Below are positions 20-37,205 of a stretch of 64,000 bases of DNA, in pieces (the first letter of the stretch is position 1; every line of letters begins with the position of its first letter). The DNA lies in NCBI GenBank assembly GCA_051294905.1, contig CM119373.1, forward strand, positions 18,600,001 to 18,664,000. Direction: 5' to 3'. Position numbers and translations under genes: made by a program. The notes under the pieces were generated by a model. The model worked only from the letters and a program-made list of their open reading frames with translations, ran no database searches and was not told the origin of the DNA. This DNA is from Botryllus schlosseri. Lineage: Eukaryota.

Positions 20-220
20 TATTACGGTAATGAGTATTGGGTGTCGATTGATTGGTGGGGGACGGTCAGCTTTGCATACGCCCAAACGCAATGTGCAAGT
101 CAATCCGCCGAACTTGTAAGCATTTCCGACGAGGCTCAAGAGACCGAAATAGAGAGACAAGTGGATTACAGGATTCCGACCGATTGGAATGAGGTGATGC
201 TGTGGACTAACGACAGTCAG
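20..220 (+). CDS. Exon: C-type lectin domain, N-terminal half (YYGNEYWVS...SFAYAQTQCASQSAELVSISDEAQ...MLWTNDSQ)
   Basis: ttcag| acceptor and |gtatta donor, phase 0-0; CTLD motif 'AQxxCxxxxAxLVSI'. Confidence 0.8.
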
Positions 221-3200
221 GTATTATAATAATGTAGCCTGGAGTTATGGCATTATTGGACCCACACGATGTATAGCCTGCCATGTACGCTGCAATAACC
301 TATAATTCGAAACAATGAATGGTTCCCCGTACGCAACTTTCAATGCTTATCACAGAGTCCAGGAACGAATGTCATGCTTATTGTATGGAGAGAAGGATCC
401 GGTGGCCCGAATAGCAAGGGGAATTACTCGGCTAGTTACGAAGGTCACGGATACGTGTGTATGAAAGGGAATAACGAACGTAAGAAAACTAACTTTCGAA
501 AACATATGACTCGCAAGCCATATAAGACCCTTTTGATAATATGGCTTTCTAGTAAATCTTCGTTATCTATATAGCTTTAAGTCTATTCAATTTGAAGTGA
601 ACCCGAATATTTTCGGCTGCAACTCGTCAGGGGTAATCGTCCGCAACTAGTACAGACAGGCTAATTTCCAATCCTCTCTAGTTCTCGACTACCCCTAACG
701 GATGTCCAATCGAATATATTGTAATTTGTTTGTTATATTCACATACACTGTGTCGCTTATCGCCTATACAGTCATTTGAGCCACATCTTTGGTTTCAGCA
801 TAGTGCAGTGTTGGGATCAAGTCACTACCTTCGACTCACGAGTCATTTCGAGTCATTGCACATTTTGACTCGAGTCAAGTCAAGTCAAGTCAAGTCACGA
901 GTCAAGTCAAAATTCAAGTCAAGTTGCCTTTTAGAAGTATGAAGCATGATTACGTCATTGCATTTCTGAACCGATGAACGAATATAGAGTTGAATATACA
1001 TGCAATAAGGGGCTGTATCGCTCACATAAACGTAGAACTGTTGAACTACGTAAGTAATTGCATGGCCTCATTTTATAGTTACTAACCAAGACAGAGAATC
1101 GAGAAACGAATTGAGAAGATGCAATACAGTACCCATTTATACATATTGATATGATACAAATCGAGTCTGCGCCAATGGTTGAGGAGTATATAAACTACAT
1201 TCGATTACAATTTCAATCAAACAAGAGGTTCGGTTAAGGTAAGAACAGAGAACACAAATATATATTTTGCTTTCAAATTACTTTACTACTAGTTTACGAC
1301 AACGTAAGCTGTAGCTTCGATCACTTCGTTTGTGGTCAATATCTTAGTGAGAGAATATTGGAGGCTCAGTAAAACGCACGATCATTAAATGATCGGTCGC
1401 TCTCATGGGTTACACAAAAGTTTGGCGAACAATCCGAACAAGATGCAAGATGCAAGAGAAGGTGATTTTTACTTGATGACTTGAAATTGACTTGTGAATT
1501 TTGCTCCGAGTCACGAGTCAATCCACATTTCTGATACGCCGAGTCAAGTCAAGTCAAGTCATTTTAGCAAAGTGACTCGAGTCAAGTCAAGTCATACGAA
1601 AAGGTGACTCGAGTCTGATTCGAGTCAAGTCATGACTCGAGTCATCCAAACACTGGCATAGTGTCATATATGGTGTCGACACAAGCAAATCTCACGGCTC
1701 AGTGAAATTGTATCACGTCACAATTTTCATTTGGCTACAGGCAATTTGACGGTCATTTTGACCGGCTTGCCAAGCATTAAATTTAGTGAAAGGGGTATCA
1801 ATCGAAAGCTGACTCTGCACTGATTACGAAAATATATATTTTATACCGCTCGCGGCCCTGGAACCCCCACAATCAGCCTCGAATTTTTCATTGTTATGGG
1901 GATTGGCATTGAGACGCAACAATGCTGTCTGGCGAAACGAGAGAGTAACGAGAGACTTACTCTCTCGTTTCACCAGACAGCATTGTAACCCGGGCGATGA
2001 GGCGCCTCTCCGACACATGGAAGTTGGTACGAGCAGGGATTCGAACCAATGAGAATGGTGTCGTGACGCCGGGTTTTGACCGTCTGCGCCACTCGCTTCC
2101 CCCGATTTATGTGAATATGCTTTTCAATGATATTTTGAATCTCTGTACCGCCAAGAAGCTCTTTGTAAATTTTCTTTACTTTGTCGTAAATATTAGATAT
2201 GGAATCGGCATTTCAAAAGGATCTGTTTTTAAGTTTGACATTGTACCGGTTTCGACCATATAAACGGAACCATTGGGTACGCCACCGTTAGTAGCGATGA
2301 TTCTGCGCTAGCAATTGCTGCTAGAACATCATGCCACAGAACACATGTGTCACGATTCACGGTTTGATTTGCAAAAACGAAAATGAAGAAGCCTGGATTT
2401 GTCTCGACTACAAAGTTAGGTTTTGTTGTCCGATCGAGGGTAAGAGACAACTTTTTTGATGGCGGATATAACTTCAATTGAATTGCCGACACTTTCCATT
2501 GATATCAGTTATATTAATATTTTAAACCCAAGATCATATCCGTACTGCAGAATTGATGAGTTTCTTTGATTTAGAGTCTCGTTGTAGCGGAGACTCTGAG
2601 TGGACCATCTGGTTTGATGAAGATGATCCGGATGACGAAGGGGATTACGAGGAATTGAGCGATTTAAGGTACTTTTCTCCCAAGCGATTTCCTATTGCAG
2701 TATGCGGAACTGCCCATTCGTTGTAATGTGATACAATTTACAATTTCGAACCGACTATGATTGAAAATTGGGTATCTCGCGGAATATTGGACATTGAGGA
2801 TTGCTGGTTTTATATTTAGAGAAGGGTTCACCAACTTGTAGGCCATGGGCACCTCGAACCATGAGCCTATTTTCAGGGGGCATGACAACATTAATTATCT
2901 TAAAGTCTCACGATAACAACATAAATAAATAAAAACTGAAGAAAAATACTAGCATAGCTATGTGTTACTTTGTAATCTTGAGTTTACTTTCTTTGTTTTT
3001 CATTTAGATTTATTTAGAGTTATATTTGCACTGAACTTCAAAGTCGATGGTGCTTACGCCTTACGCCTTAGAAACTATTGGGAATAATTCGTCTATAGCC
3101 CTATAACCTACGACCCTTGATGCTCTCAGCAAATTAAATTAGCAAAGTATGGGGCCCCACATACATAAATATCTGAACATCATCACGTGAATCCGTGCAA

Positions 3201-6200
3201 ATTTAATATTATCCCGTCGATAAAGGCTCAAATGGCGGATTCAAGATATGGGTCTTGTTAGTTAGGGAGAACGTAGTTCATTGAAATCTAATTTCCGTTC
3301 ATTCGTGGGATTGGTAATATGTTTGGTAAACTTTATTCCGTGATTAGTGATGAGAAAAAACCACTTATGTGAAATATGCATACATCAATGATACGTGTTT
3401 GATGATCTGTGACCATACGTACATATTTCAGAAAGGAGCATAAGGATAAAATATGTAAAGAGCCTTCTGCAGTGCAAGGTCAACTTCTTGACGGTCGGCC
3501 ATGGCATGCGGGGGGCCAGGACGTGGAAATTTCCGAGACGGTGGGGTTGAAATGCAAAAACAAGGATCAAGAAGACGAGATGTGTCTCGACTACAAAGTC
3601 AGGTTTTGTTGTCCGAGCGACGGTGAGAGACTAATTTTTCGATGGCGAATGCAACTTGAATTGAGTTACCTATACTTTAAATTGATATCAGCTGACGTCA
3701 TATTTCGAGATGCGATTGTTGATATACTATGTTCTTTCCAATTCTCTACTGGTTGCTGATGATTACCCCTGACGAGTGCCAGCCGATAACATTCGGGTTC
3801 ATTTCAATATGAATATACTATTCAATTGTATAATGAAGTTCTGTACCTCCAAGAAGCTCTTTAAATATCAGCTAACAATATTTTAAAACCCAAGATAACA
3901 TCCGTATTGCGGAATTGGCGAGTGTATTCGCTTTAGAGGCTCGTTGTAGCGGAGACTCCAAGTGGACCATGTGGTTTGATGAAGATAATCCAGATGGAAA
4001 AGGAGATTACGAGGAATTAAGTGATTTAAGGTAGGTTTTTCTGATCGATTTCATTTGCACCTTGTGCAACTCCAAATTAGTTGTAATGTGATACAATTTG
4101 CTCTTTCAGGCTGACTATAACTGAAAAGCTTTTATCCATGGACATTGAGAATGTTCAGATTTTATATTTAGGACAACCTGCAGGCCGTGGACACCTCGGG
4201 GGCCACGAGCCATTTTCAGGGGGCATGAGACAATGTGTCATCTTAAAGTCTAAAAACCCACGTTAACGAAAGAAGGAAATTAAAATTGAATAAAAATACT
4301 AGTATCTACCTCTGATGCTCACAGCGCACTAAATTAGGAAAACATGGCGCTGGTCCTACAACCTTACATACATAAATATTTGAACATCATTACGTGAAGC
4401 CATGCAAGTTATATACATAGGCGCCGAGTTACGGGTGGCGGGGTGGCGCAGCCACCCCATGACACATTTATGGGGTGGCGGCCACCCCATACAATTAGAA
4501 TAAACGCCCGCCGTCTGCGATTTCAAATCATCAGCGCTGTCAATTAGCGAGTCCGTGATAGCGCGCAAATGCCAACTATTTAGCATTAACAGTCACGCGC
4601 GCGAATATTTGAACACGCAACTTCGTCGGCGACGACGAACTAGTGCTTTAAAACGGCCCAATAAGTTGTGATCCGTGATTAGTAATCATGCAGACAATCG
4701 AAGCAACCTCGTTTACGACGTCGATTTCGACACGCTGGCGCTGAGAAACACCATCTTCTATCTCGACCAGAGGAGCGAATTCACGTTCTCATCTCTTAAT
4801 TAAATTGTATTTGCGCCCATATTCGTTTACAAAATAATTCTCGTAGTTCCGTGATAGTCTCTTTAATTGGAGGCTTGGAGCGCGAAATAGGACATTGTGT
4901 TTGTGTATGCCTGCGAATTGAAAGTCATTCCGGCGCAAAGTGCGCATAATCATCACTTTAACAAAGCTTTGCCAAGCCAAGTTTTATCGGAAAATGCAAC
5001 AATGCAGCTCAAACCTCGTTATAATGAGCAAACAATCGTCGCGATGTCAGACTAGGACAGTGGTTCCCAACCTTTTTGTCTTCATTCCCCACTTCAGATT
5101 TACTCCGAGCCTTCATTCCCCACCAGGACCGTAACAGCTCTTTGTCAGCCCTCCCAATAAAAATCGTTGGTCTTGGGCCCCCAGGACCCCCTCAACCCCG
5201 CTGAGCCCTACGCTTTTCCCTGCTACTTATCAGCTGCATCGGGTCTACTGTTTAGCGCGTCGCCTTACTACGACTAAACGCGCGAGGCGCGAAAAATTTA
5301 TCTAATTCGTGTTTGAATCGGACAATATGATCGGGAATTTCATATATTTAGCTATCAATTTTTCATCCCCCCTCAGCTCACGTAATCAGATTTACTGGTA
5401 GAGCTGAGGGAGGTGTGTTGGAAAACGTAGGACCCCTAAATAAGAATTGAACATCTTCGGGCGGACCAGTTGGTATATTGACTTCGTTACATTATGCTAT
5501 TTCGTGACCTCCTATATCTGTTATGTCAGGAGATATGGAATCGCCAAAACTAAAAGGCACACACGATTTCAAATTGGTATTGCTTTACTGGCAAATCATT
5601 TTTCCTGCGGGATGGCATTTGTCCTGTGTGGTTCAGATCGCATTGACAGGAGCATTCGGCGTCAGCCATTTAAAGCCAGCCAATTAAACATATATATTGT
5701 ATATATATATCGAAGTTTTGGGTCACCACAAGGGCATCCCTTCTCGGCCAAGGTCTTCTCGTTGCTGATCGTTCTGGTACACTTCTCGGAGATGCATGTC
5801 ACATGGCCTATAACTTCATATGCCATGGTGCGTCGTAGCGCAGCAATGGCCGACACCGAGGTCTCCATTTCTATCAATTCTACGTAGTTTCGTGGGGGAA
5901 GGGTAACCAATAATCAGATATTTGGCAATATTAAATCGCGCACCCAGCGCGAAATTTTTTCGAAAAAGTGGCATAAATTTTTAAAAAATACTTTAATTTA
6001 TGTTAATTCACGTAAGAATTTCGGGCCCCTTCGAGCTCGCCCCCTCCCCAATTGGGGGATTTGGGGTGCGGAAGTTACGGTCCTTTTCCCCACTACCCAG
6101 CACTTTTGTCGTCACAGAGCAGCTATTTGCTGGTTTGACTACACAAGACACACAACCACACCAGTACGCAAGACAATCGCCTATAACTGCAACATAAAAC

Positions 6201-9200
6201 GAATTGTGAACCGATACCAGTAACGCTCATAATTTCGCGAAATCGTTATTTCACGTCCAATTAGTCGTGCTGGATGCGTTTGTGACGCCATCATTGGCCA
6301 TCCAGAGTCAAAAATGAGGTATTGTGAACAACACGCAATATAATTTTCGATACATACATTCCAGAGCAGTTAACTGGTAGCGGTAATTGCGCATGTGTCT
6401 CCGTGAATATGTCGACTGACCTGTATATAATTTTGAACAAATGCGTCTATTCCCCACCAGAAAGCATTGAATTCCCCACCAGTGGGGAATTCCCCACCGT
6501 TTGGGAACCACTGGACTAGGAAGATCCAAGTTGGAACCCCATTGTGCTGTACGCAAGTTGAATAATTACTGATTAGATGCGCGCTTTCTCGTTTGCTATC
6601 ATCTGTAGGCTACTAATACTTGTCTGTATGATTTGTTATTAATACCGCGCATTGTGCAGTGCACGGCGTTGAATTACGTTGTCAAATATTGATGCAACAC
6701 GAGCTTCTCGGCGGCGCAAATTCTGAATTTATTCGATTAGTTTTAATGGGAACCTTCTATGTTCCAATAAACTTCAATGCTGGACGGACCCTGTTGAGCT
6801 AGCGCAGGGGTGGGCAAACTTTTGAGCTCGCGGGCCGCATTCAACATCTAAATTCATTCGCGGGCCGCATTATATAAAATTGAGATTAATAGTGAGGACA
6901 TGGAGATTATATATGTTCCTATTTGAAACAAAACAAACATTGCTTTGATGATATCGTACACACGTCAGAAACATGGAGAGATTTCATTGGCTGGTCGACT
7001 TCAATAACCAATTTGTCAAAACTATATAGATGAAAATCGGTTGTCCCGATTCTTAGAACAGGATTGGAATTTAAATCTATGAGCAGCGATCTGTTCATAG
7101 ATTTACTAATTCCACTTTTGGTTCAGTTCCAGGACACACAATACTCACAGCATCATAACCATGTTAGCATCAAACACCCATCTACGATGTGTGGATAAAA
7201 TATAAATACCCCAATTCTACACATACAGAGAACGAATCTACCTAAGACACGCGTAAATCGTTTGTATAAGCACATCACTGAAATAATTAGAACTGAAGTT
7301 ATCCGAGTTATCCGAGTTACATCAATCTCGTTTAGGATTTCTGTGATGTTTAGTATATAGTTGAAACCTTTCAAACCGCGTGGGCCTTGAGATCGGGCTG
7401 TCGCGCCAGAAATTAAACATAAAGTAAGGAAGTATTTACCTTAAAATAGTGGCTCTCAAACTTTTTGAGACACGCCCCCCTTATGATGGTGAAAAATTTC
7501 GCGCCACCCTTATCTTCATATCACAAAACGCAACTATAGGGTGCTAGCAAACCTAACAGATAGTTAGATGGCACGGAAGGTTACGAATGTGGATCAGGAA
7601 TTTTTCAATATGAAATTTAGACTAAATACACAGCAACAATCATGACGTGAACGAGAATCGCGCGAAGCGCGAAAAATTTTTCAGTGGAGGGGGCGCACCC
7701 CAGTTTTAGAACCACTGTCTTCAAATTATCATGGTGAAATAAACTAAGAAAAAGTTTATTGAAGTCCCCGCATTTATTCGATTTTTAGTACGGATTTTAT
7801 CAATATTTTGAAAAAGTTTCTTTAGACTCTCGCGGGCCGCACAGAACGGTGTGGCGGGCCGCATGCGGCCCGCGGGCCGTAGTTTGCCCACCCCTGAGCT
7901 AGCGCAATCATATCGCGGATCGAATTCCAAACCTTTGGGATACGGTATGTATTTCTATTGATAAGGTCGCGGCATGCGCCCATATTGCTCTTACTGTATA
8001 ACACGTGGATAATTAAAAGCGCACCATTTTACGATCAAAGTCGACTGGCTGACCGGAGCCTACGTAGGCCGTAGGTCCCGGGCTGAAATTAACTAGCGCG
8101 TTGTCGGCATTAAGACCCCAGGTGCGTAGCCACTAGCCAGGTAGTTTCTCATTCATAACTAGAAATCCCGTCCTTTTGAAATGCCAATTCACAAATTCGT
8201 ATTATCGATGCTGCGTACTGCAAATCAGCGAGAATCATTTGTATGCGAAATTGGTCATCGATATCTCATGTGCTATTGTGCGTGCGACGTGCGTGCACTA
8301 TCGGCGGTGGTTTGATTTAACGCGTCTGCATGTAGGCTCGCTACCGTCCGCAGATACACTTTCTCCAAACGGTAACAATTTCTGACTGTAATATTGTTTG
8401 TGTTTACGTATCTTTTTGATTAAAACTTATGCCCGCGTCTGCACAAATTGTGCTCGTTGCCATTGCCGAATCTGGGTATTCAGGTATGATTAGCCCACTC
8501 TGTAATTGTAATTATTGCAGGTTTGCGGCATGTCTGCAATTTCGTTATCAGCGCAATCTTGCCGGCCGATTTTACAGTCCAATAAAATTGATCACTACTA
8601 TGTATTTCGCACAGCGTAGGCCTACCGAGGCTGATTTCAGCAATCTAACGATCCTTATTTGATGCACAAATTCGACATCATCTTTAGAAACGTAGATTCG
8701 GAACATTATCGCGATTTGACGACCAATATACGTTTACCTTCTACAAATTAAGGTGCATTATTTGCATCGAGGCGGGCCGCAAGCTGCGTTTGAAGTATTT
8801 TGTGAACCATTTTTGTGATAAATATTCTCGGAGCGAAAAGTTGAACAGTGTTTAATTTTGTGTGCCTGCTAGTTGGAGTTTATTCCAGTGCCCTTGATAT
8901 TAATCCAATTATGCTTTGCGAACGTAAATCGGGACATGCAACAATGCAGTCGAAATCGATGTTTTGAATAGCAACCAATTGCCGCGATGCGAGCTACTCA
9001 ATACTAAGTAAAAACCCACTGTGTTGGCGGTAAGGGAAAATTACTGATTGACCACGCGTGTTTGTATCATAATTCTTGTCTATCTCTCGTGTTCTAGGAT
9101 TGTCGCGTCGCGTTACTGCTCAGTCCAGCGACGAATGCCGAGTGCGCGGCAATTAATGACACAATTTCGCAATCGTCGTGATGCGAATCTCGCTAATTGG

Positions 9201-12200
9201 TCGCGGCCCACGTAACACTAATAATACGACTTGTGGAATTGAAACTGAATATTAGCGTCATAATGGTCATTTCAAAAGGACGGGGTTTTGTGTTTCAAAA
9301 GGAGGGGGTCTCGACACCCCCTGGCTACGCGCCTGCCGCCACCCCATGCAAAAATAAAAGCCGGCGCCTATGTATATATATTTACGTCGATAAAGGCTCA
9401 AATTTCGAAAAAAATGAATTCAGGATTTTGGGTTTTATTAGGGGTCTGTAGTTCATTGAAATCTAATTTCCATTCATTCGTAGGCCTGTTAATATTCTTG
9501 GTGTCCTTCATTCCGTGGTTAGTGATGGGAATGAACCTATTATGAAAAATACGCTCTCACCAATGATACATGGCTGGTGGTCGGTGACCATACCTACTTA
9601 TTTCAGAAAGGAACATAAGGATAAAATATGTAAAGAACCTTCCGCTGTGCAAGGTCAACTTCTTGACGGTCGGCCATGGCATGTGGCAGGTCAAGACGTG
9701 GAAATTTCCGAGACGATGGGGTTGAAATGCAAAAACAAGGATCAAGAAGACGAGACGTGTCTCGACTACAAAGTCAGGTTTTGTTGTCCGATTAAAGGTA
9801 TGGCAGAAGCATCGCAAAGACTATTATACGTTGAATTGGATAATTAAATGATTTAAGTTGCATCAGCTTTCAATATTTGGATTCCAAGATCACTATATCG
9901 TATAGTAATGCGTCATTAGTTTATATTGTGTATATTTGCTTCAGAGCCTTCCTGTAGCGGAGATTCCGAATGGACCATGTGGTTTGATGAAGATAATCCA
10001 GATGACAAAGGAGATTATGAGGAATTGAGCGATTTAAGGTATGTTTTCAAACGATTTCATATTGCAGTAGGCGGCACTACACATTTATTGTAATGAGATA
10101 CAATCTGCAATTCCGTACTGGTTACGATTGAAAAGAGGGCAATTCATGTACATTGAGATATTTCAGATTTTCTATTTAGAGCGAGGTTTACCAACCTTTT
10201 GGCCGTAGACCCCTCGGGGGCCATGACGTTTTTTCAGGGGCATGAGAAAATTTATCATCAGAACATCAGCCTCGAATTTTCGTTGTGACCGATGTGGCTT
10301 ATTGACGCAACGTCGCAGTCTGGCTCCTTATACTCAGCTGGAATCTCGTATTGCCAGACAGAATCGTTGCGATCACTATTCAAAATTTGTGGCTGATTTT
10401 TGGGGTTCCAGGGCTATGAGAAGAATAAAATTCATATTTTCGTAATCAGCAAAGCAGCAGCTTTCCATTGATGCCCACTTCATCAATTTTAGCACTTGGC
10501 AAGCCGGTCAAAAATAGTTGTAAAATTGCCTTTGGTCAAATGAAAAGTATGACGTAACACAATTGCAGTGAATCGTTCAGTCTCGCTGTGTCCACACCAT
10601 TTAGGACACTATTGCCCGAGCGGCTCGGAAGGATTTGATTGACATCTCCGAGAGCCAGGGTCGACAGATTTTATTGTGCCAAATAGCAGCAATGAATACT
10701 GACAGTCAGAGACGTGGTACTGAACAATCTGTATCAAAATGTATAATACGCAATAGGTATAAAGAAATTGAAAATCTGCTAATGTTTCTCGGCTATCTGC
10801 TACCTAATAGTAATTTTGTTTGCTTCTTTGGCATTGTCCTAGACATCTACTTACCATCACCGAACCCCAGCTATTTCAAGAAAAGCGTGGATGGCATTAC
10901 GTCATGCCGCAGTCTGTCGAGTCTGAGCTTAGGCTTATAACCAAAGTATCATTTGTGGTGTGGACACCAGCAAATCTCACGGTTCAGTGAAATTGGGCTA
11001 CGTCACACTTTCCATTTGGCTGAAGGCAATTAGATAGTAATTTTTGACCGGCTTGCCGAGCATTAAATTTGATAAAACGGGTATCAATCGAAAGCTACCG
11101 CGGTATTGATTGCGACAATATGAATTTTATTCTGCGGCTCGTCCTGGAACCCCACAAAATCAGCCTCGAATGTTAGATTGTAACGGAGTTTGGTAGTGTG
11201 ACGCAACTATGCCGTCTGAGCACTGAGCAGCTCAGGAGCAATTACGCACGAGAGTAATACTGTGAATGCTCAATCGGTTCGGCAACGATGACGAATACGC
11301 TTTCTGTTCCCAGATGGAATTGTTGTGTCACAATACTGTATGCGTGTGATTGAAATTCATTGTTTCCTCCAAAGCAGTGCATGGTTCCTGACCTTTTCCC
11401 ATCCACGTATCATTTCGAGGTAGTATGTAGTTTTCGCGTACCGCCTACATAGGTTACGCGCATCGAAGGCGGTCAAAAAACGCTTCCACCGTGTTGAGCT
11501 GCCGACGGCAGCGAAACAGAAAATAAACTGCCCATTTTAAGGCGTGGTATATGATTTCTGTAGTGGATCCATTTGGAACTCTTGTGGTCAAATATATTAC
11601 ACGGAATTTGGTTAAGTAAGAATCCCAGTGCTTTACGACTAGATCTTTTCCTCGTAGGCCGTCATTGGTAGCATTGCCCCTACGCACGACGACGACCTTA
11701 CCACGACGACGACGGCTTCAAAACCTCAAAATCAACCCCACCTGAACTAATTACTCCCTTCGGTCGAAAAAAAACAGAATTTACTTGCGTACCACCTGGA
11801 AGAACTTCGCGTACCACAGGTTGGAAACCCCTGCTCCAAAGTCCTTGCGAATATTTATCACAAATGCAACAATTCAGCGCAATTTGTTGTTATAATTAGC
11901 AAACAATTGCCGCCATGCTAGCTACTCAGAACCTCGTTGTGTTCGACGTAATTGACGGATTGCTGATTGGATGCGCACTTTCACGTTTGTTGTTATTTGT
12001 GGTATTCATGGTTGTTGTTGTTGGTATGGAATTTTGGTGCTCGTCAGCAATGGCCTTGTGCACCAGGTCAATTAGTTATATATGCATTATTCCATTAAAT
12101 CTCTCTTCCGGACAACAAAACAAATTCTATTGCCGAGGATATCGTGGCGGGATGGGTCAGTATGTTATCTATGCAGAAACGCACACCGTGTTCGGTATTC

Positions 12201-15200
12201 ATGGTGTAATTCTACTACAATAGTTTTTTACATCTGGCTGATGTTCTTTATTATGATTCAGCATCTGTCGATTTGGAGCACGGTCCACTTACAGACTTTT
12301 TTTAAAAACACCGCTTAGGCAGATCGGATAGCGAGGAGCCTATAAAAGCCTTCCACGTCTGTAATCATCTGTTACATGCAGGACCTAACTGCCGCACCCC
12401 GACCCCCTAATTGGTGCATCGAGCGCGAAGTAGGTTCAAAGCTACCTCATGAATCAACGTACCTTATGGAGTATTTGTTTTTTGTAACTTCATTCAAGTA
12501 TTCTTCGCGCCGTCCGCGATTTGACATCGTCCGATGTCTTGTTTTTAATACGGGTAACCACCTCCCTAATAAAACAATACGCATAATTTATAGGAATAGG
12601 CCTTTCGGTGTCGGCCATTGCCGTGCCACGACATACCAATTCATATGAAGTTTAGACCAACATGCGGCTACATGAAATGTCCTGTCAAAGATATCGACAG
12701 TGAGAAAACCTCTATCGAAAAGGATCGAAACCTTCGGTATATACATGCCGAATTGCCCATTGACCTTAATGGCTGCCTCCAATCAAGTATTGTTGTCGCC
12801 AAATATTTATAGAATCATATGTAATCGCTATGCCATCGACTGAATGCCATCAGTCAATGGTATTGGCAATTTCATATACTACTATATGAATAATCGCGAA
12901 AATATTCACGCTAGGCGCGACCAGACAACTGTAGCGCACCGAAAACACGAAAACTGGCGCCCACGAGCAGTGGTTAAAGGATAGTCGCGAAAGGGAATCT
13001 GGTGGGTCGCGCAATGAAATTTAGATGAAAAGTGGGTCGCGAACTGAAAAAGGTTGGGAAGCACTGCACTAGATATAAAAAAATCCACATCATTGTGACT
13101 TATTGGTTCAATAAGACCGTGTGATAGGCCTACATGGAATGCACAGGTCTTATTTCAGCAGATCAATCATTACTGCACAAGTGCATAAGGATGTATATAC
13201 CAAATGAACATATATTTTGTGCGTAATGGGATTCTATATGGACGTGGAAAAGCGCTTCTCTCTTTGCTCTGGATCTTATATCGGCGCTGGCGTTGGTGCT
13301 AAATTAATTGACATTACCAATTAAAATCGCTGGCGTTTCCAGACTTGATAAAACAAAGAAAACTGGTACGCCGACAACGCTACGTCTAATGCGGGCTTAA
13401 AAAAGAGATACGTTGCCATTAGATTGTTCAACTACTACTACGACAACATAAGCTGTGATCGTTTGGTTTGCGGTCAATTTATTTGTGATGGAACAAGAGG
13501 ATCAGTGAAACGTACGATTAGTGAATGACTGGTTGCTTTCACAAGTGCCACCGGCGTATCGCAAGCAATCCAAACATATCAAGATACAGTGATTTAATCG
13601 ACACCGTTTACTTAAACTGACTTGTAAATTTTGCTCCGAGTCACGAGTCAATCCGCATTTGTGATGCGCCGAGTCATGTCAAGTCATACGAAAAAGTTGA
13701 CTCGAGTCTGATTCGAAATTAACAAACAAAAGGGGAACGTAGTACAGTGAAATCAAATTTCCACTCATTATAGCCCTGTTCATATTTTTGGTGACGTTCA
13801 TTCCGTGTTTGTACGACTGTACGTGCAATGTGGTTAGTGATGGGGCAAAACCTCCCATGCGAAATATGCATACATCAATGGCCGGTGACCATCCCCACAT
13901 ATTTCAGAAAGGAGCATAAGGATAAAATATGTAAAGATCCTTCCGCAGTGCAAGGTCAACTTCTTGACGGTCGGCCATGGCATGCGGCAGGTCAGGACGT
14001 AGAGGTTTCCGATACGGTAGGGCTGAGATGCAAAAACGAGGATCAGGAAGACGAAATGTGTCACGACTACAAAGTCAGATTTTGTTGTCCGATTAAAGGT
14101 ATGAGACAAGGTTTTCGACGGTTAATATTGAATGAGGTCAATGTATGTAACCACCTCGTTTTGTTATCAGATTTTATCATTTCAAATGCAATCTTCCTTC
14201 CATGTACTACGAAATAGCTGTATTAAACATATTTCTTTAGAGCCATTCTGTAGAAGAGGTTTCGAATGGACTCGGTGGTTTGATAGAGATAATTCTGGTG
14301 GCAAAGGGGACTTCGAACTATTGAGTGATTTAAGGTAAGTTTCCCGAAAAAAGAACACATAACGTAATAGGCTATAGGTAGGGAAAATTCTAAAATGAAT
14401 GGTCGCCAGCGATTAATGTGACATGTTGAATTCGGAACCTTGTGAAATATGCGTTAGAAGTGTATTACCTATTAATAATATTATTATCAAGGCAATACAT
14501 CAATATTTTTTTAAAGAAATTCGAAAAAAGATGTTTTGCTAAATATGAGCGTTGATTGTGATGGACGACATCATCTGGTGAATTCGACAATCGGTGCTTA
14601 GTAGGATATTAATGTATTCAGGTTCGAGTTTAGGGTTATAAGTTAGGGTTAGGTTAAAGTTATGGATTCGAGGTTGCAGAATGGTTCGGGTCAGGATGTG
14701 AGGTAGGGTTAGGGTTTGGATTTGCGAAATGCCGACTTCATCAAATGCCGAATTTACTGGTCACCCAATGTACATGTAATTAATGTAATGTAGGCCTACG
14801 GTGACACAGATTGAATGAGCAGCTGATCAAATCATGGCCACTTTTTTCTAAGTTTAAATGACGAAGGCAGGCACCAAACTCTCTAGAGTGTATTTAACTG
14901 AGACTTAACCTTGAAAGAATGTTGCTACAGATCTGGTATGTGTGGTGCGACCATTCGATTCGCGTTCCTGTTTGATATGCCGACTTTAGCAATTCCAAGG
15001 TTCTCCGTGTACTTATTTGCATACTAAAAATATTTTCTATCCATATTTAGGCCTATACCTATTTAAACAAACTTCGAAAACTACAACTTCCTATCACATG
15101 CTGCATCACGGTGGAAACAGGAAAACCAAACGATAATAGAATCAACATTTATTTCGATATACTGTGTTACGGATGTCAGATTGTCGATATGGCACGTGGT

Positions 15201-18200
15201 CACGATCAGTAAACTATGAAACTAGGCTACATCCACGCCCAGTGTACTGTCTCCATTTGTAACATCCCAACTGGAAGCAGACCACTTGAGTATAAAGGTC
15301 ACTGGTCTAGTATTTAGACGATTTATGTAGGTATTTACTCCTTTAACATCATTACCCGCAACCATATACAAACTATATATTATATCATCGATAAAGGCTC
15401 ATGAACCGTAGAAAAATCAGGGATATGTATAGTGAGATAAATGAAAAAAACATATACTTCAAGTTTCGTATATTGTTAGGCGCGTGTAGTATAACTTCAA
15501 TTCAAATTTACATTCATAGGCCTGCTAGAAATCTTGGCGAATTTCACTCCTTGTATGCACCACTGTAACATATTGGTTAAACAAGCGAAAGAACTTCTTT
15601 AGCACAATAGAGAGGGTAAAAGAATCTGTATTTGTCAGCAACAGTCCAAATCCAAAATAGCAATAACAAAAATGCAATTGGGTGAAATGTGGGAGGAAAG
15701 AAAGGCACATGTGAGTGGCTCGATATAACAGAGTCAACAATGCTGGACAACATCAATTGTATATACATCAATGACACTGGTCAACAAAATGAATTTTTTT
15801 TAGGCAGAACATCTGAGAGCCGTTTCTGGGGTTTTCGAGGTTGCTGATTACGAATATCACATTAGTTTTGTCAGATTGGCTCTTTTGTCAGAAGATATTT
15901 ACACCCCTAAAAAGTCCAAAATTACTGTATTTACCCTTAAATATTTCACTTGGTAGGAAGAAAATCGTACTTTTTTCTAATTTTATAGTGCCCATAAATA
16001 ACTAATTGGCTATAAGAGCCCTCATGTCATTCTCAGTCATTCTATCAATATTAACATGGCATGATGCGAAATATTTGTTTGTCAAAAAGCAGTTTGTCAA
16101 GCATGAAAATCGTACTTTTGCACAACGGAAATTCATATTCTCCTGTATCATTTGGTCATTCCACCTAGATTAAAGAGGATAATAAAACTATAACATTTGT
16201 CCTTGGAAGGCTTAACTACAATACTCATATGTGTCTCCTTTTTTGACTGGTAAATGGATAATTTTCCGCTGAGTCAACAAAGTGGATATACCTAGTAACC
16301 ATATCAAACGAGAAGCTTAAATCTGGTATCTGATATATTCGAATACCGATGAAAGATTCCAGTTTTACATTATGAAGGAGTTCACTGCCTGTAATTTCCC
16401 CTAAGATGCAGTAAATAAAACTTTTTAGATGATCATAATGCACCCAACCACAAACAGTTGGGCCGAAAATTCGTATCTGCGTATCGAACACTTGAGCACA
16501 AACATGAGAACAAAAGTTCACTTCCTGTTCAGAAATCTTGGTATATTTTCCGATCATCTTGTTGATTATCAAGGGGAGAGGCTCTACCAAGACATCAGAA
16601 CAACAAAAGAGAGATATCAGAGCAGATGAGATGAACAATTGAACATAATATGCCAGACCATTGCCGGAACCTTTCGAGAAACTGCACTAAATAGCTTACA
16701 GGCGAAAATCTTACTAAAAAAAAAACAATTTTGATTCAAAATGTATCAATAATATTATATTCCAACTGATTATTTCAAATTCACAATAGGTGGTTGACGT
16801 GAAACTGATTGAATTAATGCCACGTTATTTTAGTAGGCTATCTAGGTAAGTACTTATGTACATGACTGGAGTTTATTTACGTACATGATAATACCCCCAT
16901 GGGCTATCTCCACAACAAGAGCCAATTTGAAAAAACTAAGGTCTTATTCGAAATCAGTGCCCTTCAGAACCCCCAAAACCACTCTTACTTTGTCTGCCTA
17001 AAAATATGTGTTGACCAGTGTAATATATGTTTGATTTCCGGTGACCTTATATTCTACAGAAAAGAGAATAAAGACAAAATATGTAAAATGCCCTCCGCAG
17101 TGCAAGGTCAACTTCTTAACGGCCTTCCGTGGCAAGCTGCACGTCAGAATGTGGATGTTTCCAAGAAGTTGGGGTTGAGATGCAAAAACAGAGATCAGGA
17201 AGAGGGGAGATGTCTCGACTACAAAGTTCGGTTTTGCTGTCCGATCAAAGGTATGGAGCAAGTATTGAGGTTTTTGAAGTAGGGTTACCATATTTCTCGA
17301 TATATCTAGGGTTAACATATGTCCTCCTTTAGAAGGATTTGTCCTCCTTTTAAGGAAATTGGAAATGTCCTCCGAGGACACCTAAAAGTCCTCCTTTTGG
17401 ACAATTCGTCCTCCTTTACAGCTGATAATGGACAGAGTCAACTGAAAATAGTCATAAATGACGTAAATAGGTGATGCGGACGTTCGATCGGGTCATTCGG
17501 GAGTCGAATGAAAGTGATGACCTTTCTTTAGTCAACACAACAAGAATTCCATTAAATATTACAAAATTCGTAAACTGACTTTTACAATTTGGTAGAAGTG
17601 TCTTCCTTTCCGATTCCAAAATATGATAAACCGTGACCCTAGTTAAAGGGGCTCTGCCTTCAAAATATGATGCGGTCACGAATGAAAGTTCAGGGCGTGA
17701 AAAGCATTTCAACAGCAATCGTTCTCCTCGGAAAACCATCGTCTTCAAATACAGGTATACGATTTTCACGAAAAGTATCATTCAGGTACATTTCTGATGC
17801 ACTTGTCTCTAATGTTGCACTTTTGGATGCGATAAACGCTGGAAAAACAAATTTAGAATAGATGGTTGTCAGCCGATATTATGAAGGAAGTGTGTCTTAC
17901 AAGCACGACGGCTGAGTTACGACACGTATAGGTGCGTTCAACGGAAGATGGTTTCGGTCAGAGGTATATCTCGGATATCGCATAATTATACCGTATTACC
18001 ATAGTGTCCTACAATAGTGTGGACACAAGCATCTCTCACAGCTCACTGCGATTGGTTCACATCACGCTTTCCATTAGGCCAAAGGCAATTTCACGGTATT
18101 TTTTTTTGACCGGCTTGCCGAACGCGAACATTGATAAAATTAGTATCAATTGAAAGCTACAGCGGCACTGATTGCGACAATATACATCTTATTCTGCTCG

Positions 18201-21200
18201 TGGTCCTGGAGCTCCCCAAAATCAGCCTCAAATTTTGCATTGTAACGGAGTTTGGTATTGTGACGCAACCATGCCGTCTGAAAGAAGGTGAGAAGTAGCG
18301 CAAACCGCAAGCGTATTGGTCATTGTTGCGCAAGCGATTGCGCATTCACACTCTCACTCTCACTGAGCACTTGCTCCTGAGCTGCGTTATATTATTCCAG
18401 GCGGCATTTTTGCGTCACAATACGTAGCTCCCTTTCAATGAAAAACTCGACACTGATTTTGACGGGTTGCTTGTGTCCACACCATTGTAGGACACTACGG
18501 TATTACATTTGTATGAATATAAATAATTTCATGAGAGTTATAACGGACATCAGATCTAAACTTGTGTGACTGGGCCTTTGCTAACCTAAAGCTAGTTGTG
18601 CATCCATGATCACGTCGAGAAAATACAACAGTGAAAAACGCGACAGGAATTTCACATAGGGTCAGGAAGCCATGACGAATGACCTCGACACCAAATAGAT
18701 ATATGATTTGCAACGGTGCATGCCACGAAAATCACTGAGCTGCAGTCTGAATGCGGTGACTAGCCGAGGAAAATGGCTGTTGCCAAAATGTTTTCAGACC
18801 TTCAACTTCATTTTGGGACCATATCATATTCAGAACGCAGTGCCCCTTTAACATTGAAGGGGAGATCTAACGCTTACGATCATACATATCTGGATATTAG
18901 CTTTTACAATGTTGTATCCAGGTTCCCTTCCCTGTACAATATGTAATGTACTATATATTTATTTTAGAACCTACCTGTAAGGGAGATTCGAAATGGACAA
19001 TGTGGTTTGATCGCGATAATCCTGGCGGCAAAGGTGACTTCGAACTATTGAGCGATTTAAGGTACACGGTTGTAAGTAAAAATTACATAATGACTAATTA
19101 CCAGTTACCAGCGCTGCTACACAAGTAGAAGCAGAAATAAAGCTACAAATTTATCTTCAATTCCAAGTAGAAGCAGATATTTCCGAAGCTAATTCAAGTG
19201 TTAGTAGAAAATGAAAGTTCTCAAGACAACTGAAGTGGGGTATTGTAATTTTAGACTGGTCATAAGACAGGTGCCTAAAAACTGTGTATGTGGAAGTAGC
19301 ATAAACAAGAACACTTGAGTAAGTATTGCAAGTACCTAGAAACTACTTGAGTAACACAAAAATGTTGATGTGCTTCGATACTGACCTCCTCTGAAAAAAA
19401 AGGTGAGCCAAATGACACTTTTAGAATAAGCTAATAGTAAATATGTAGTGTGCAATCAAAATTATTGGTGGACTTCATTCGGTACGCGAGATAAACACTC
19501 ACATTAGAATCTTATTTTCACAATATCTGCCCATCGATTACGCAATTATGATGACCGGTGGCCATAATTTAGAAAGGAGCATCCGAAGAAAATATGCAAG
19601 AGGCCATCTGCGGCTCAGGGCCGACTTCTAAACGGCAAACCATGGCATGCGGCGGGACAGGATGTTGCAGTGTCGAAGACATTAGGGTTGGTATGCAAAA
19701 CCAAGAATCAAGATGACGAGAGGTGTCGCGATTACAAAGTCAGGTTCTGTTGTCCGCTTAGAGGTAAGCAGTTGTTGTTGTTGTTTGACGACTACAATGG
19801 CCATTTACACTATGCCGTTTTTCTTAATTTTGATTCCGTAGTTGCCGAATTGTAGCATGGCCCACTTCTAGGCTTTTTTGACAACGCTTACGCGGATGAT
19901 ATGGCGATGAGGAGCCTAGATAAACCTCTAACACTTAGGTAGGTAAGTGGAGTCGACCTCGACCTCGGCCGGACTTGTACCCGCAATCCATTGGAGCCGG
20001 AGCTGTGCTTTATATACCACTACTCTATCTGACTATACTGGTGTAAGCAATCCCTATAGAAAATTCTACATCTAACTGCATTACCAAAGGTGGTCAAAGC
20101 AGTAAGCATTGCTACTTGAGTAGAAGTAATGCCGTTAACTTCCACTCAATTCAGATTTGAAGTAGCGCATTCGCATATATACAATACGTACTACAAACAG
20201 AGGTAAAAACCGGACGGCCAGAATAGTATACAAGTCTATATATGAAGTAAATTTGTTCGAGGTGTCACATACTTTGTATTGTAAATCCGAGGATGGTTGA
20301 TGTCGAAATTCCAAGATGCACCTCAGCGGCAACGGAAAATGGCTGATGACATTACAAATAGGTCGCATTTTGAAAATATATTCAGTTACCATGATACATG
20401 GGCTAATTCGCCCGATTGGTATGAGATTCACAAATAAACGGGGTACCTTACTAAAGCCCAAGTGTAAAACGTAATCGAATTTCCGCAACAACTGTTAAGG
20501 AGATGTTGAAATAATCCGAAATCGTCACCCAAAACCAGTAGAAGTAGCCTACTTTAATACAAACCATTTCTGCATTACAGAACTAGTAAGTTCATGATGA
20601 TTAACATATCACTGCGATTTTACATAACCAAATCTGATTTCTCTAGGTTCTCCATGCGAGGATGGCACTTTTTGCGGACCCAATGCGGAATGCCTTGACG
20701 GCAAGTGTACGTGCGTGGACCGCAAATTCGGTGAAAACGTACACGAAAATCTCGAAAGTATACTTGCTCCGGAAATAACATGCGGGGCGGATTTCATTCA
20801 ATTGACGTAATACTGTAGCTTATATAGTTTCATAACTAAACATCAATACCTTCCATATGCTCTTTCATACGTGTTGATATAATAGCGGATATAACATAAT
20901 GACTCCACCGATCACTATTAAAGCGTGTGGTGCAAATCAAGTCAGTGGCATTTTTCCAGTAGCAATTTCACACACCCAGTCCACTTGGTGTAAACGAGCC
21001 AAACACACCCGAATGGCTTATATATAGGGTCGTATACATTGGGCCAAAACTATTTCAAGCGGAAGTAGAATATGAACAGTCTGAAGACTGCTCAAGTAAT
21101 TAGTTTGAAATAAGTGCATTAGGTCGATGGGTCGGTTACTTTTCGTAGTTAAAGGAAGAGGCTATTTTGCTAATGCAATATGTATCTTCACGTCTAATGT

Positions 21201-36320: not shown

Positions 36321-37069
36321 TTTCGGAAGCAATATTCAATAGCAGCTCCCGGAACTTTGTGTATCCTACTTCAGATCTTAATAACGCAGATTTCAAAGTA
36401 AAAGTGACCATTCTACGCCTAGTTTTGCCTAAAACCTGACACGAAGTAGTCTATAATCAAAACTACTTGAGTAATCAGCGCAAGTATAAGTCAATACATA
36501 CTTGGATTAATTGAAAATTACAAGTAGGCCTACTTCGCCGCCTCAGGCGCAGAATACAATGCGACCAACTTCAATTGAGCGAAACACTAAAAGGCGTTTG
36601 ATATAGTTTAGTATGATTCATCATTCTTCAGTAACTGCAATTTTGCTAGACAAGTTTCGGGAAAGGGAGTCGTGCGCGTCATTGGACGGTGGCCAGAAAA
36701 GTCGTGACAGGAAACTTACTCGATGAAACAACTCAGAACGGTGGATGGAGGTTATTTTTAGTGGTGCGCGTCATTGGGTATCACCAAGGGATACTATAGG
36801 CATCGATTTACTTCACATCTCCTTGAATGTTCATTCGATGTCAAAACAGATGCCGATATGTAAAAATGAGAATTGAGAGGCCAAGTTAACTTTCATAACA
36901 TTAGGTACATTATTACGTATAAAATCATATTCCATCGCCATATGAGGAGCCAAGTATGGTTGAATGTGAATCAATGTAAAACAAACATGTTTAAGAACAA
37001 CCATGGTTGTGTATTGATCTGATGAAAATTTTACCAAAATGAATGAGATGTAATGAACATATTGTTGGT

Positions 37070-37205
37070 ACCGTTGTTGATATTGTTCTTTCTAATTCTC
37101 TACTACTAGCTGCTGACGATTAGGCCTACCCCTGACGAGCCACATCGGACAATGTTCATGTTTGATTCAATATCAATATATTAATTGTAGAGATGATGTT
37201 TGTAT
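37070..37205 (+). repeat. Third, more decayed copy of the hammerhead-bearing repeat
   Basis: acccctgacgagccacatcggacaatgttc at 37128; flanks match 3715-3845. Confidence 0.6.

What the first reader, a model, noticed from the sequence alone, without database searches (positions are those of the whole stretch)
601..634. Intact minimal hammerhead ribozyme in a short dispersed repeat; only the antisense copy is intact
Seen: the minus strand of 601-634 reads ACCC-CUGACGA-G(UUGCAGC)C-GAA-AAUAUU-C-GGGU, with every catalytic-core nucleotide, a 4-bp stem I, a 1-bp stem II, a palindromic stem III and a UUC cleavage site. Two more copies of the same 80-130 bp repeat lie at 3765 and 37128. Established: minimal type I hammerheads with 1-bp helix II and palindromic helix III are the hallmark of Penelope-like retroelements and cleave best as dimers. 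Inference: this is a non-autonomous Penelope/retrozyme-like family. The intact copy is antisense to the host pre-mRNA, while the sense intronic copy (3765) has a core mutation (GAA to GAT), as expected if sense copies that cut the transcript are purged. Three copies are too few to establish this.
Basis: partly seen in the sequence, partly recalled or inferred. Interest (0 to 1): 0.8.

Follow-up and report, generated by a model that had tools for sequence, protein, structure and literature searches.

The report
Hammerhead motif in dead Penelope fragment
The 34-base hammerhead ribozyme motif is real, but it sits in the leftover tail of a dead Penelope-like retrotransposon that has over 13,000 such tails in this genome, which is a well-known association, and nothing supports the idea that gene-sense copies are selectively purged.

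Summary
The motif is confirmed. The minus strand of 634..601 carries every hammerhead core nucleotide, a 4-bp helix I, a single G-C helix II pair, a palindromic AAUAUU helix III and a UUC site. A strict descriptor finds only this hit in the window and none in 300 shuffles.

It is not a small non-autonomous family. It is the 3' tail of a 5'-truncated copy of an autonomous 2.69-kb Penelope-like element with an RT plus GIY-YIG-like ORF. That element occurs as tandem and head-to-head copies elsewhere in the genome. The genome holds 4,275 exact copies of this hammerhead and 13,655 within three mismatches, so two to three per 64 kb, one of them intact, is the average.

Four diverged sub-families co-vary in helix I, in helix III and in a 6-bp pseudoknot between loop 2 and a box upstream of helix I. 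The window's "intact" copy has that pseudoknot broken (3 of 6 pairs).

The strand-purging idea is unsupported. It rests on three copies against a roughly 31% intact base rate, and RNA-seq shows no pile of ends at the cut site. Published work finds such minimal motifs inactive as monomers.

Other first-stage readers noted the same Penelope-hammerhead link on at least five other pieces of this genome. The association itself has been known since 2014.

The parts
601..634 (-). Minimal type I hammerhead motif of copy A. Helix I is 634-631/604-601, the core CUGACGA is 630-624, G10.1 is 623, loop 2 is 622-616, C11.1 is 615, GAA is 614-612, the helix III palindrome is 611-606 and C17 is 605. The predicted cut lies between 605 and 604.
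   Evidence: only hit in the window; 0 in 300 shuffles; 4,275 exact genome copies against 0 for the control.
639..644 (-). Upstream box (GCGGAC here, GCUGAC in the main family). In the family it pairs with loop 2 as a 6-bp pseudoknot; in this copy only 3 of 6 pairs remain.
   Evidence: pseudoknot 100% paired in 6 representative copies, 2 pairs with compensatory changes; the sequence is.
580..656 (-). Copy A: a 5'-truncated tail fragment of the Penelope-like element, 89.6% identical over 77 bp to a full-length unit. Weaker similarity continues further 3'.
3693..3868 (+). Copy B: a 176-bp tail fragment, 93% identical to a full-length unit. Its hammerhead at 3765-3798 carries A14->U (3787) and U15.3->C (3790). 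It lies in sense orientation in the intron between WxxW exons ~3409-3640 and 3915-4073.
37058..37189 (+). Copy C: an old tail fragment, 74% identical. Its hammerhead remnant at 37128-37161 has C11.1->G, A14->C, 16.3 A->G, a helix I 3' strand changed from GGGU to AUGU, and a 6-nt insertion before helix I.
2109..2163 (+). Copy D: an extreme 5'-truncation that keeps only the last ~55 bp of the tail, downstream of the hammerhead.

Best explanation
Window 601-634(-) is the hammerhead ribozyme motif carried in the 3'-terminal (pseudo-LTR) segment of a Penelope-like retrotransposon. Here it is preserved in an old, severely 5'-truncated and non-functional insertion of about 80-115 bp. The source element is a 2.69-kb canonical Penelope-like element with a C-terminal endonuclease. 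Its ORF opens inside the hammerhead, and its first ATG lies 15 nt after the cut site, inside the tail. The complete ORF therefore exists only where two copies lie in tandem. In the source copies the motif is under purifying selection. All core nucleotides are invariant, and helix I, the helix III palindrome and a 6-bp pseudoknot between loop 2 and an upstream box all co-vary. By analogy with published Penelope hammerheads, I infer that two motifs pair through the palindromic helix III into a double hammerhead that cuts tandem transcripts after C17. This would release a unit-length RNA that starts 9-15 nt before the start codon. The dispersed fragments, including the three in this window, are by-products of abortive reverse transcription and decay neutrally. 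That this copy keeps its core is survival by chance. Identity, family, layout, copy number and covariation are shown here. Self-cleavage, dimer dependence and any role in translation are inferred.
For: The motif is present and not a chance match. There are 4,275 exact and 13,655 near copies, with a control of 0, which predicts 1.8 near and 0.55 exact copies per 64 kb against 2 and 1 observed. Walking upstream from the repeat reaches tandem 2,692-bp units with 860-codon open frames. These carry RVT_1 at E=7.8e-9, YVDD and the motif VVYEYRCHCDCGYVGRT, a weak GIY-YIG hit, and 840 homologues of which a few carry PF01541. Copies show 5' truncation and head-to-head pairs. Word depth in run X1, which is probably DNA, rises about 1000-fold from the ORF 5' end to the tail. 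The hammerhead plus stems is 93% conserved against 76% for the flanks over 30 copies. Seven pairs change on both sides, with 0 of 500 shuffles reaching the observed score. The peptide after the ATG is conserved between sub-families although the upstream frame differs. The same organisation is published in PMC4209133, PMC8557442 and PMC11167929.
Against: No self-cleavage is shown. RNA-seq gives no pile of ends at 6842/6843 of L043, as also reported for the Anolis element (PMC11167929). Nearest-neighbour folding puts the double hammerhead near 0 kcal/mol, against -10.5 kcal/mol for a competing two-hairpin fold that sequesters the core. No Rfam model matches. Helix II is a single base pair, unlike the 6-8 bp reported for Penelope hammerheads. 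The covariation set is six hand-picked representatives of four sub-families.
Confidence: 0.88

Rival explanations
1. The repeat is a non-autonomous Penelope- or retrozyme-like family, and copies in the sense orientation of host genes are purged or inactivated because they cut the pre-mRNA. Intact copies would then survive mainly in antisense.
For: In this window the core-intact copy is on the minus strand and the mutated copy B lies in sense orientation inside an intron of a + strand gene. A preprint reports depletion of vertebrate retrozymes from introns (10.64898/2026.07.22.740005).
Against: The pattern rests on three copies. About 31% of copies are exact regardless of strand, with 2,158 forward and 2,117 reverse. 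The copies are truncations of an autonomous element, not a family of their own. Copy A has not been shown to lie inside a transcript, and its pseudoknot is broken. Tails are abundantly read through in RNA with no ends at the cut site. Monomeric minimal hammerheads were inactive in vitro (PMC4209133).
Confidence: 0.06
2. The motif is a hammerhead by descent but no longer works as a self-cleaving ribozyme in this family. It would be conserved as an RNA structure for another purpose, such as a protein-binding site for the RT or a translation-start element. The stable two-hairpin fold or the pseudoknot would then be the functional form.
For: The two-hairpin fold is about 10 kcal/mol more stable than the double hammerhead and is 95% paired in all sub-families. 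No RNA ends are seen at the cut site. In the Anolis element, hammerhead catalytic mutants did not affect insertion in vitro and no RNA-seq ends were found (PMC11167929). Naiad Penelope-like elements thrive without hammerheads (PMC8557442).
Against: All catalytic nucleotides are invariant across four sub-families, while helix I and helix III change only by compensatory pairs. That pattern is what a working hammerhead predicts and what the two-hairpin fold does not require, since that fold shows no change on both sides of any pair. The Anolis hammerhead does cleave in vitro (PMC11167929).
Confidence: 0.2
3. The copy at 601-634 has been co-opted by the host as a regulatory ribozyme, antisense or upstream of the WxxW-repeat gene.
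For: Its core is intact although its flanks are about 10% diverged.
Against: With about 10% divergence, 23 constrained positions stay unchanged by chance about 9% of the time, and thousands of copies exist. The family's pseudoknot is broken here. The copy's predicted fold is no better than shuffled sequence, z +0.74. There is no partner motif nearby for dimerisation.
Confidence: 0.02

Closest known systems
Minimal hammerheads of Penelope-like elements (Cervera & de la Pena 2014, PMC4209133; Lunse, Weinberg & Breaker 2017, cited in PMC6765202)
   Same: [quoted passage not shown] Helix III is reduced to a palindrome that implies dimers. Both lie in the pseudo-LTR of an RT/GIY-YIG element, occur in thousands of mostly solitary copies from truncated elements, and show pairs on opposite strands 100-700 bp apart and tandem motifs ~3 kb apart.
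   Different: Published metazoan families have a 6-8 bp helix II hairpin. Here helix II is a single pair, and its loop pairs with a box 4 nt upstream of helix I. I could not read Lunse et al., so I cannot exclude that this form is already among their ~150,000 variants.
Poseidon element PAc of Anolis carolinensis (Frangieh et al. 2024, PMC11167929)
   Same: Both are tandem units with the hammerhead in the pseudo-LTR at the very start of the ORF. In both, the inserted 3' end lies inside the beginning of the ORF, and RNA-seq shows no ends at the cut site.
   Different: In PAc the start codon is at stem II and the cut site lies 26 nt downstream of it. Here the first ATG is 9-15 nt downstream of the cut site.
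Animal non-LTR retrozymes (Cervera & de la Pena 2020, cited in PMC13725137; Li et al. 2026 preprint, 10.64898/2026.07.22.740005)
   Same: Both carry a type I hammerhead, derive from Penelope pseudo-LTR sequence and have no ORF in the fragment itself.
   Different: Retrozymes are short tandem arrays that give circular RNAs. The window copies are solitary, and closely spaced motifs elsewhere (L057) are parts of complex Penelope insertions.
Hammerheads with a stem I/loop II tertiary helix, and type I hammerheads with a short helix II just upstream of a start codon in RNA viruses (PMC10085705; PMC13725137)
   Same: All use a Watson-Crick helix between loop 2 and sequence beside stem I. In the viral examples the cut site lies a few nucleotides before an ORF start.
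   Different: Those are viral or bacterial motifs with a normal helix III that act as monomers. Here helix III is a loopless palindrome, and the setting is a retrotransposon.

Membership tests
Hammerhead ribozyme, minimal type I (Penelope type) | Conserved core C3U4G5A6N7G8A9, G12A13A14, A15.1-U16.1 and H17 | tested here: met
   One search shows all positions present in 601-634(-). One search finds a single descriptor hit and 0 in 300 shuffles.
Hammerhead ribozyme, minimal type I (Penelope type) | Open-ended helix I flanking the motif, supported by covariation | tested here: met
   ACCC/GGGU forms 4 bp. Across sub-families, four helix I pairs change on both sides, including GCUA/UAGC in L018.
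Hammerhead ribozyme, minimal type I (Penelope type) | Helix II closed by G10.1-C11.1 | tested here: inconclusive
   The G-C pair is present but is the only pair. In the family, loop 2 forms a 6-bp pseudoknot with an upstream box. In the window copy only 3 of 6 of those pairs remain.
Hammerhead ribozyme, minimal type I (Penelope type) | Diminished, palindromic helix III that implies dimers | tested here: met
   AAUAUU occurs in 4,275 copies and AAGCUU in 314. The central UA<->GC change keeps the palindrome.
Hammerhead ribozyme, minimal type I (Penelope type) | Mg2+-dependent self-cleavage 3' of position 17 | not testable with these tools
   RNA-seq of three runs shows no pile of ends at the site. 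This is weak negative evidence from libraries not designed to capture such ends.
Hammerhead ribozyme, minimal type I (Penelope type) | Match to a curated Rfam hammerhead model | tested here: not met
   There is no hit at the gathering score or at E<=10. I did not check whether any Rfam hammerhead model covers motifs that lack helix III.
Penelope-like element, canonical with C-terminal endonuclease | Reverse transcriptase domain in a single ORF | tested here: met
   L043:4132-6708 matches RVT_1 at E=7.8e-9 and has YVDD. The window copies keep only the non-coding tail.
Penelope-like element, canonical with C-terminal endonuclease | C-terminal GIY-YIG endonuclease | tested here: inconclusive
   Pfam GIY-YIG scores E=0.027, 15.2 bits, below the cut-off of 22.6. 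The motif VVYEYRCHCDCGYVGRT...R..QH is visible. Two homologues carry a precomputed PF01541.
Penelope-like element, canonical with C-terminal endonuclease | Pseudo-LTRs from partial tandems, frequent 5' truncation, and an inverted 5'-truncated partner | tested here: met
   Tandem periods are 2,692 bp (L043) and 2,722 bp (L054). Head-to-head pairs have variable spacing. Depth shows a truncation gradient.
Penelope-like element, canonical with C-terminal endonuclease | Hammerhead motif within the pseudo-LTR near the 3' end | tested here: met
   The motif lies ~100 nt after the stop codon, and its cut site is ~72 nt before the insertion 3' end.
Animal non-LTR retrozyme | Short tandem repeats, each with a hammerhead, forming a family distinct from the autonomous element | tested here: not met
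   The window copies are solitary. An apparent 650-bp unit extended into the full element. The closely spaced motifs in L057 are a head-to-head Penelope pair with short extra tails.

The most novel reading that the evidence does not exclude
This family's hammerhead may be an undescribed architectural variant. Helix II is cut down to one base pair and is functionally replaced by a 6-bp pseudoknot with a box upstream of helix I. A single-nucleotide linker crosses that helix, and helix III is a loopless palindrome. The cut site lies 9-15 nt before the element's start codon, which is itself encoded in the tail. Dimer-dependent cleavage of tandem transcripts would then both release a unit-length RNA and create the 5' end of a translatable message, as recently shown for hammerheads in RNA viruses. 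A competing core-sequestering hairpin (CUGAC/GUCAG) would act as an off-state in monomers.
Probability: 0.3. Interest if true: 0.55.

Novelty: new member of a known kind. Interest (0 to 1): 0.25.

Why it matters
For this window it matters little. The motif is one average, decaying fragment among more than 13,000, and it illustrates a textbook link between hammerheads and Penelope-like elements. The value of the follow-up is corrective: a core-intact ribozyme motif in an intron-like setting is no evidence of function or of selection on host transcripts. At the level of the family, the co-varying pseudoknot, the one-pair helix II and the start codon just after the cut site give a compact system in which two open questions could be tested. 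Those questions are why Penelope-like elements keep hammerheads, and whether the motifs cleave in vivo.

Tried and rejected
- **Rfam:** a scan of the window at gathering score and of 500-760 at E<=10 found nothing.
- **Loose pattern:** CTGANGA..GAAA..TH gave 7 matches in the window against 2.8 expected, so it is uninformative. The hit at 62519-62548 fails the strict descriptor.
- **A ~650-bp non-autonomous unit:** many copies seemed to end at the same 5' point, but the flanks continued to match and led to the full 2.69-kb element.
- **Short retrozyme-like arrays:** same-strand motifs 135 and 212 bp apart on C1 proved to be a head-to-head pair of 1.07- and 1.24-kb truncated copies, each with a short extra tail.
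- **Alternative parse:** using the upstream CUGACGA as the core fails, because there is then no helix I and no G10.1-C11.1 pair. That stretch is instead the pseudoknot box.
- **Thermodynamic folding:** neither the monomer nor the dimer favours the hammerhead, and z-scores run from -1.6 to +0.7.
- **In vivo cleavage from RNA-seq:** no position qualified as a place where molecules begin or end. Six adapter-joined reads in X23 end exactly at C17, but similar clusters occur at unrelated positions, so they count for nothing.
- **Literature:** a full-text search for the motif sequence found nothing, and Lunse et al. 2017 (PMC5785218) is not held.
- **Organism:** not identified. Run names are coded, and the closest protein hits are 64% identical or less and unnamed.
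- **Genome-wide strand bias relative to genes:** not attempted, for lack of an annotation.

Full report
**Observation.** The minus strand of window 634..601 reads ACCC CUGACGA G UUGCAGC C GAA AAUAUU C GGGU. This gives a complete hammerhead core, a 4-bp helix I, one G10.1-C11.1 pair closing a 7-nt loop, a six-base palindrome in place of helix III, and C17 in a UUC context. A loose pattern is not informative, with 7 hits against 2.8 expected. A strict descriptor that demands the pairs finds only this site and none in 300 dinucleotide-preserving shuffles. Rfam has no match at the gathering score or at E<=10. The copies at 3765 and 37128 are real and align over about 100-180 bp.

**What the repeat is.** A search of the window's own 495-Mb genome with the 131-bp repeat gave hundreds of candidates, about 91% identical over 77 bp. 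In the fetched loci the motif often occurs twice on opposite strands. The minus copy is always on the left, and the spacing varies from 176 to 1,095 bp. One locus is a 98%-identical 1,023-bp palindrome. Homology always ends at a fixed point about 70 bp after the motif and reaches a variable distance upstream. That is the signature of 5'-truncated retroelement copies.

Walking upstream went from a 650-bp piece through flanks that still matched to a further 517-bp piece. It ended in tandem units of 2,692 bp on contig 16, with an inverted partial copy beside them. Each unit holds an open frame of about 860 codons with RVT_1 (E=7.8e-9), YVDD and a C-terminal VVYEYRCHCDCGYVGRT...QH motif. Pfam GIY-YIG scores only E=0.027. 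The protein has 840 homologues at E<=1e-20, the best 64% identical. I saw no extra zinc-finger linker before the endonuclease. By that one published criterion (PMC8557442) the element resembles the Penelope/Poseidon group; this was judged by eye from the translation.

Tandem pseudo-LTRs, frequent 5' truncation, an inverted truncated partner and a hammerhead in the pseudo-LTR are the published hallmarks of these elements (PMC4209133, PMC8557442, PMC6765202). The window holds no ORF. It holds only tail pieces: A at 580-656(-), 89.6% identical; B at 3693-3868(+), 93%; C at 37058-37189(+), 74%; a tip without a hammerhead at 2109-2163(+); and a 52-bp scrap at 30727-30778.

**Abundance.** The exact motif (loop 2 and N7 left free) occurs 4,275 times, 2,158 forward and 2,117 reverse, against 0 for the reversed control. 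With up to three mismatches there are 13,655. That predicts 1.8 recognisable and 0.55 exact copies per 64 kb, and the window has 2 and 1, plus one more decayed copy. The window is therefore average, and about one copy in three is exact whatever its strand.

**Structure and selection in the family.** Over 30 tail copies from several sub-families, hammerhead stems and core are 93% identical to a reference copy, against 76% for the flanks. A second helix III type, AAGCUU, has 314 copies. Variants with A or C at 15.3 number only 139 and are mostly single AACAUU mutants, the change also seen in copy B.

Four sub-families were found in fetched loci: L002, L048/L054, L049/L056 and L018. They differ by compensatory changes:
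- Helix I 1.4/2.4 switches between A-U and U-A, and in L018 helix I is entirely different (UCGCUA/UAGCGA).
- The centre of helix III switches between UA and GC.

An earlier agent's note on another piece of this genome (s1-231978) proposed that loop 2 pairs with a box just upstream, and I tested that here. The box GCUGAC lies 4 nt before helix I and is complementary to GUCAGC in loop 2. In other sub-families the pair becomes GCCGAC/GUUGGC and ACUGAC/GUCAGU. On six representatives the full structure has 7 pairs with changes on both sides, the pseudoknot is 100% paired, 0 of 500 shuffles reach the observed score, and sliding the partners drops pairing to 45% or less.

The set is small and hand-picked from loci fetched for other reasons, so this is supportive rather than conclusive. 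Helix II is thus one pair stacked on a 6-bp helix formed in pseudoknot fashion. A one-nucleotide linker would have to cross that helix; from general knowledge of H-type pseudoknots this seems geometrically feasible.

A competing fold sequesters the core in two hairpins, CUGAC/GUCAG and CCGAA/UUCGG. It is about 10 kcal/mol more stable than the double hammerhead. It is also 95% paired in all sub-families, but only through one-sided wobble changes. It may be an off-state.

**Layout relative to the ORF.** The insertion 3' end is ...AAGCTCTTCAAAT, about 72 nt after the cut site. The open frame starts inside the motif and the first ATG is 15 nt after the cut (L043 6857). In the second sub-family the ATG lies 9 nt after the cut. 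The peptide MNILF.C..KFCT... is conserved, while the frame upstream of the ATG differs. Translation therefore starts in the tail, and the full ORF exists only across a tail-to-head junction. A very similar layout is published for the Anolis Poseidon element (PMC11167929). Hammerheads placed just before a start codon promote translation in some RNA viruses (PMC13725137). This part is inference.

**RNA evidence.** Three bulk RNA-seq runs of the same species were laid on one unit. Depth was 200-300 over the tail against 0-5 over the ORF. In addition, 96-100% of reads ran on into unrelated sequence. The signal is therefore read-through of dispersed tails inside other transcripts, not element expression. 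No position qualified as a place where molecules begin or end. No variant reached 10% within 6787-6847, although several flanking sites did. A fourth run (contigs, probably DNA) shows about a 1000-fold depth gradient from the ORF 5' end to the tail, which is the truncation profile.

Copy B lies in sense orientation in the 275-bp intron between WxxW-repeat exons of a + strand gene, and it carries A14U. Copy A lies upstream of the first detectable exon of that gene. A weak Lectin_C-like ORF at 41-226(+) (E=0.047) makes an intronic position possible but unproven.

Against purging:
- The pattern rests on three copies against a roughly 31% intact base rate.
- The mutated copy is the younger one.
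- Copy A's pseudoknot keeps only 3 of 6 pairs (box U->G and two loop changes), so it is not intact by the family's standard.
- Single minimal motifs were inactive in vitro (PMC4209133).
- Transcripts read through the site.

The genome-wide strand test could not be run without an annotation.

**Verdict.** This is a genuine hammerhead motif in an ordinary dead fragment of a known kind of retrotransposon. The association is already known, and other first-stage readers noted it on at least five other pieces of this genome. The only less ordinary aspects belong to the family rather than to this copy: the one-pair helix II with its pseudoknot, and the start codon just after the cut site.

Noticed in passing
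window 2361-19786 (+): A + strand gene built of repeated Mucin2_WxxW modules. Exons lie at about 2361-2456, 2553-2723, 3409-3640, 3915-4073, 9515-9844, 9923-10090, 13828-14353, 16899-17279, 18955-19065 and 19568-19786. The intron 3640-3915 consists mostly of Penelope tail copy B, whereas the matching gap after exon 9515-9844 is ~80 bp and modules 13828-14214 and 14222-14353 are nearly contiguous.
   Followed up: partly
window 41-226 (+): A short ORF with a weak C-type lectin match (Lectin_C, E=0.047, below the cut-off). It may be an upstream exon of the same or a neighbouring + strand gene.
   Followed up: partly
L043:6817-6916 and L054 (minus strand, tandem units of 2,722 bp): The element's ORF starts at an ATG 9-15 nt after the hammerhead cut site, inside the 3' tail, and runs across the tail-to-head junction. 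A complete ORF therefore exists only in tandem copies. The N-terminal peptide MNILF.C..KFCT is conserved between sub-families.
   Followed up: partly
L002:1940-1991 and the family in general: The core CUGAC can pair with GUCAG of loop 2, and CCGAA with UUCGG. This gives a two-hairpin fold at -10.5 kcal/mol that hides the catalytic core. It is compatible with all sub-families and may be an off-state.
   Followed up: partly
L018:940-991 (-): A fourth, more divergent hammerhead sub-family has a 6-bp helix I (UCGCUA/UAGCGA), U at position 17 and the box/loop pair ACUGAC/GUCAGU. Its copy number and parent element were not examined.
   Followed up: no
window 1990-2110 (+): Just upstream of tail tip D lies GGGATTCGAACC, the reverse complement of a tRNA T-arm-like box. 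It may be a remnant of a tRNA-derived SINE in the opposite orientation.
   Followed up: no
G000:C2:32077529, 32082941 and 32088354: Three same-strand AAGCUU-type hammerheads are spaced 5,412 bp apart, twice the usual unit. This may be a composite or interrupted tandem array.
   Followed up: no
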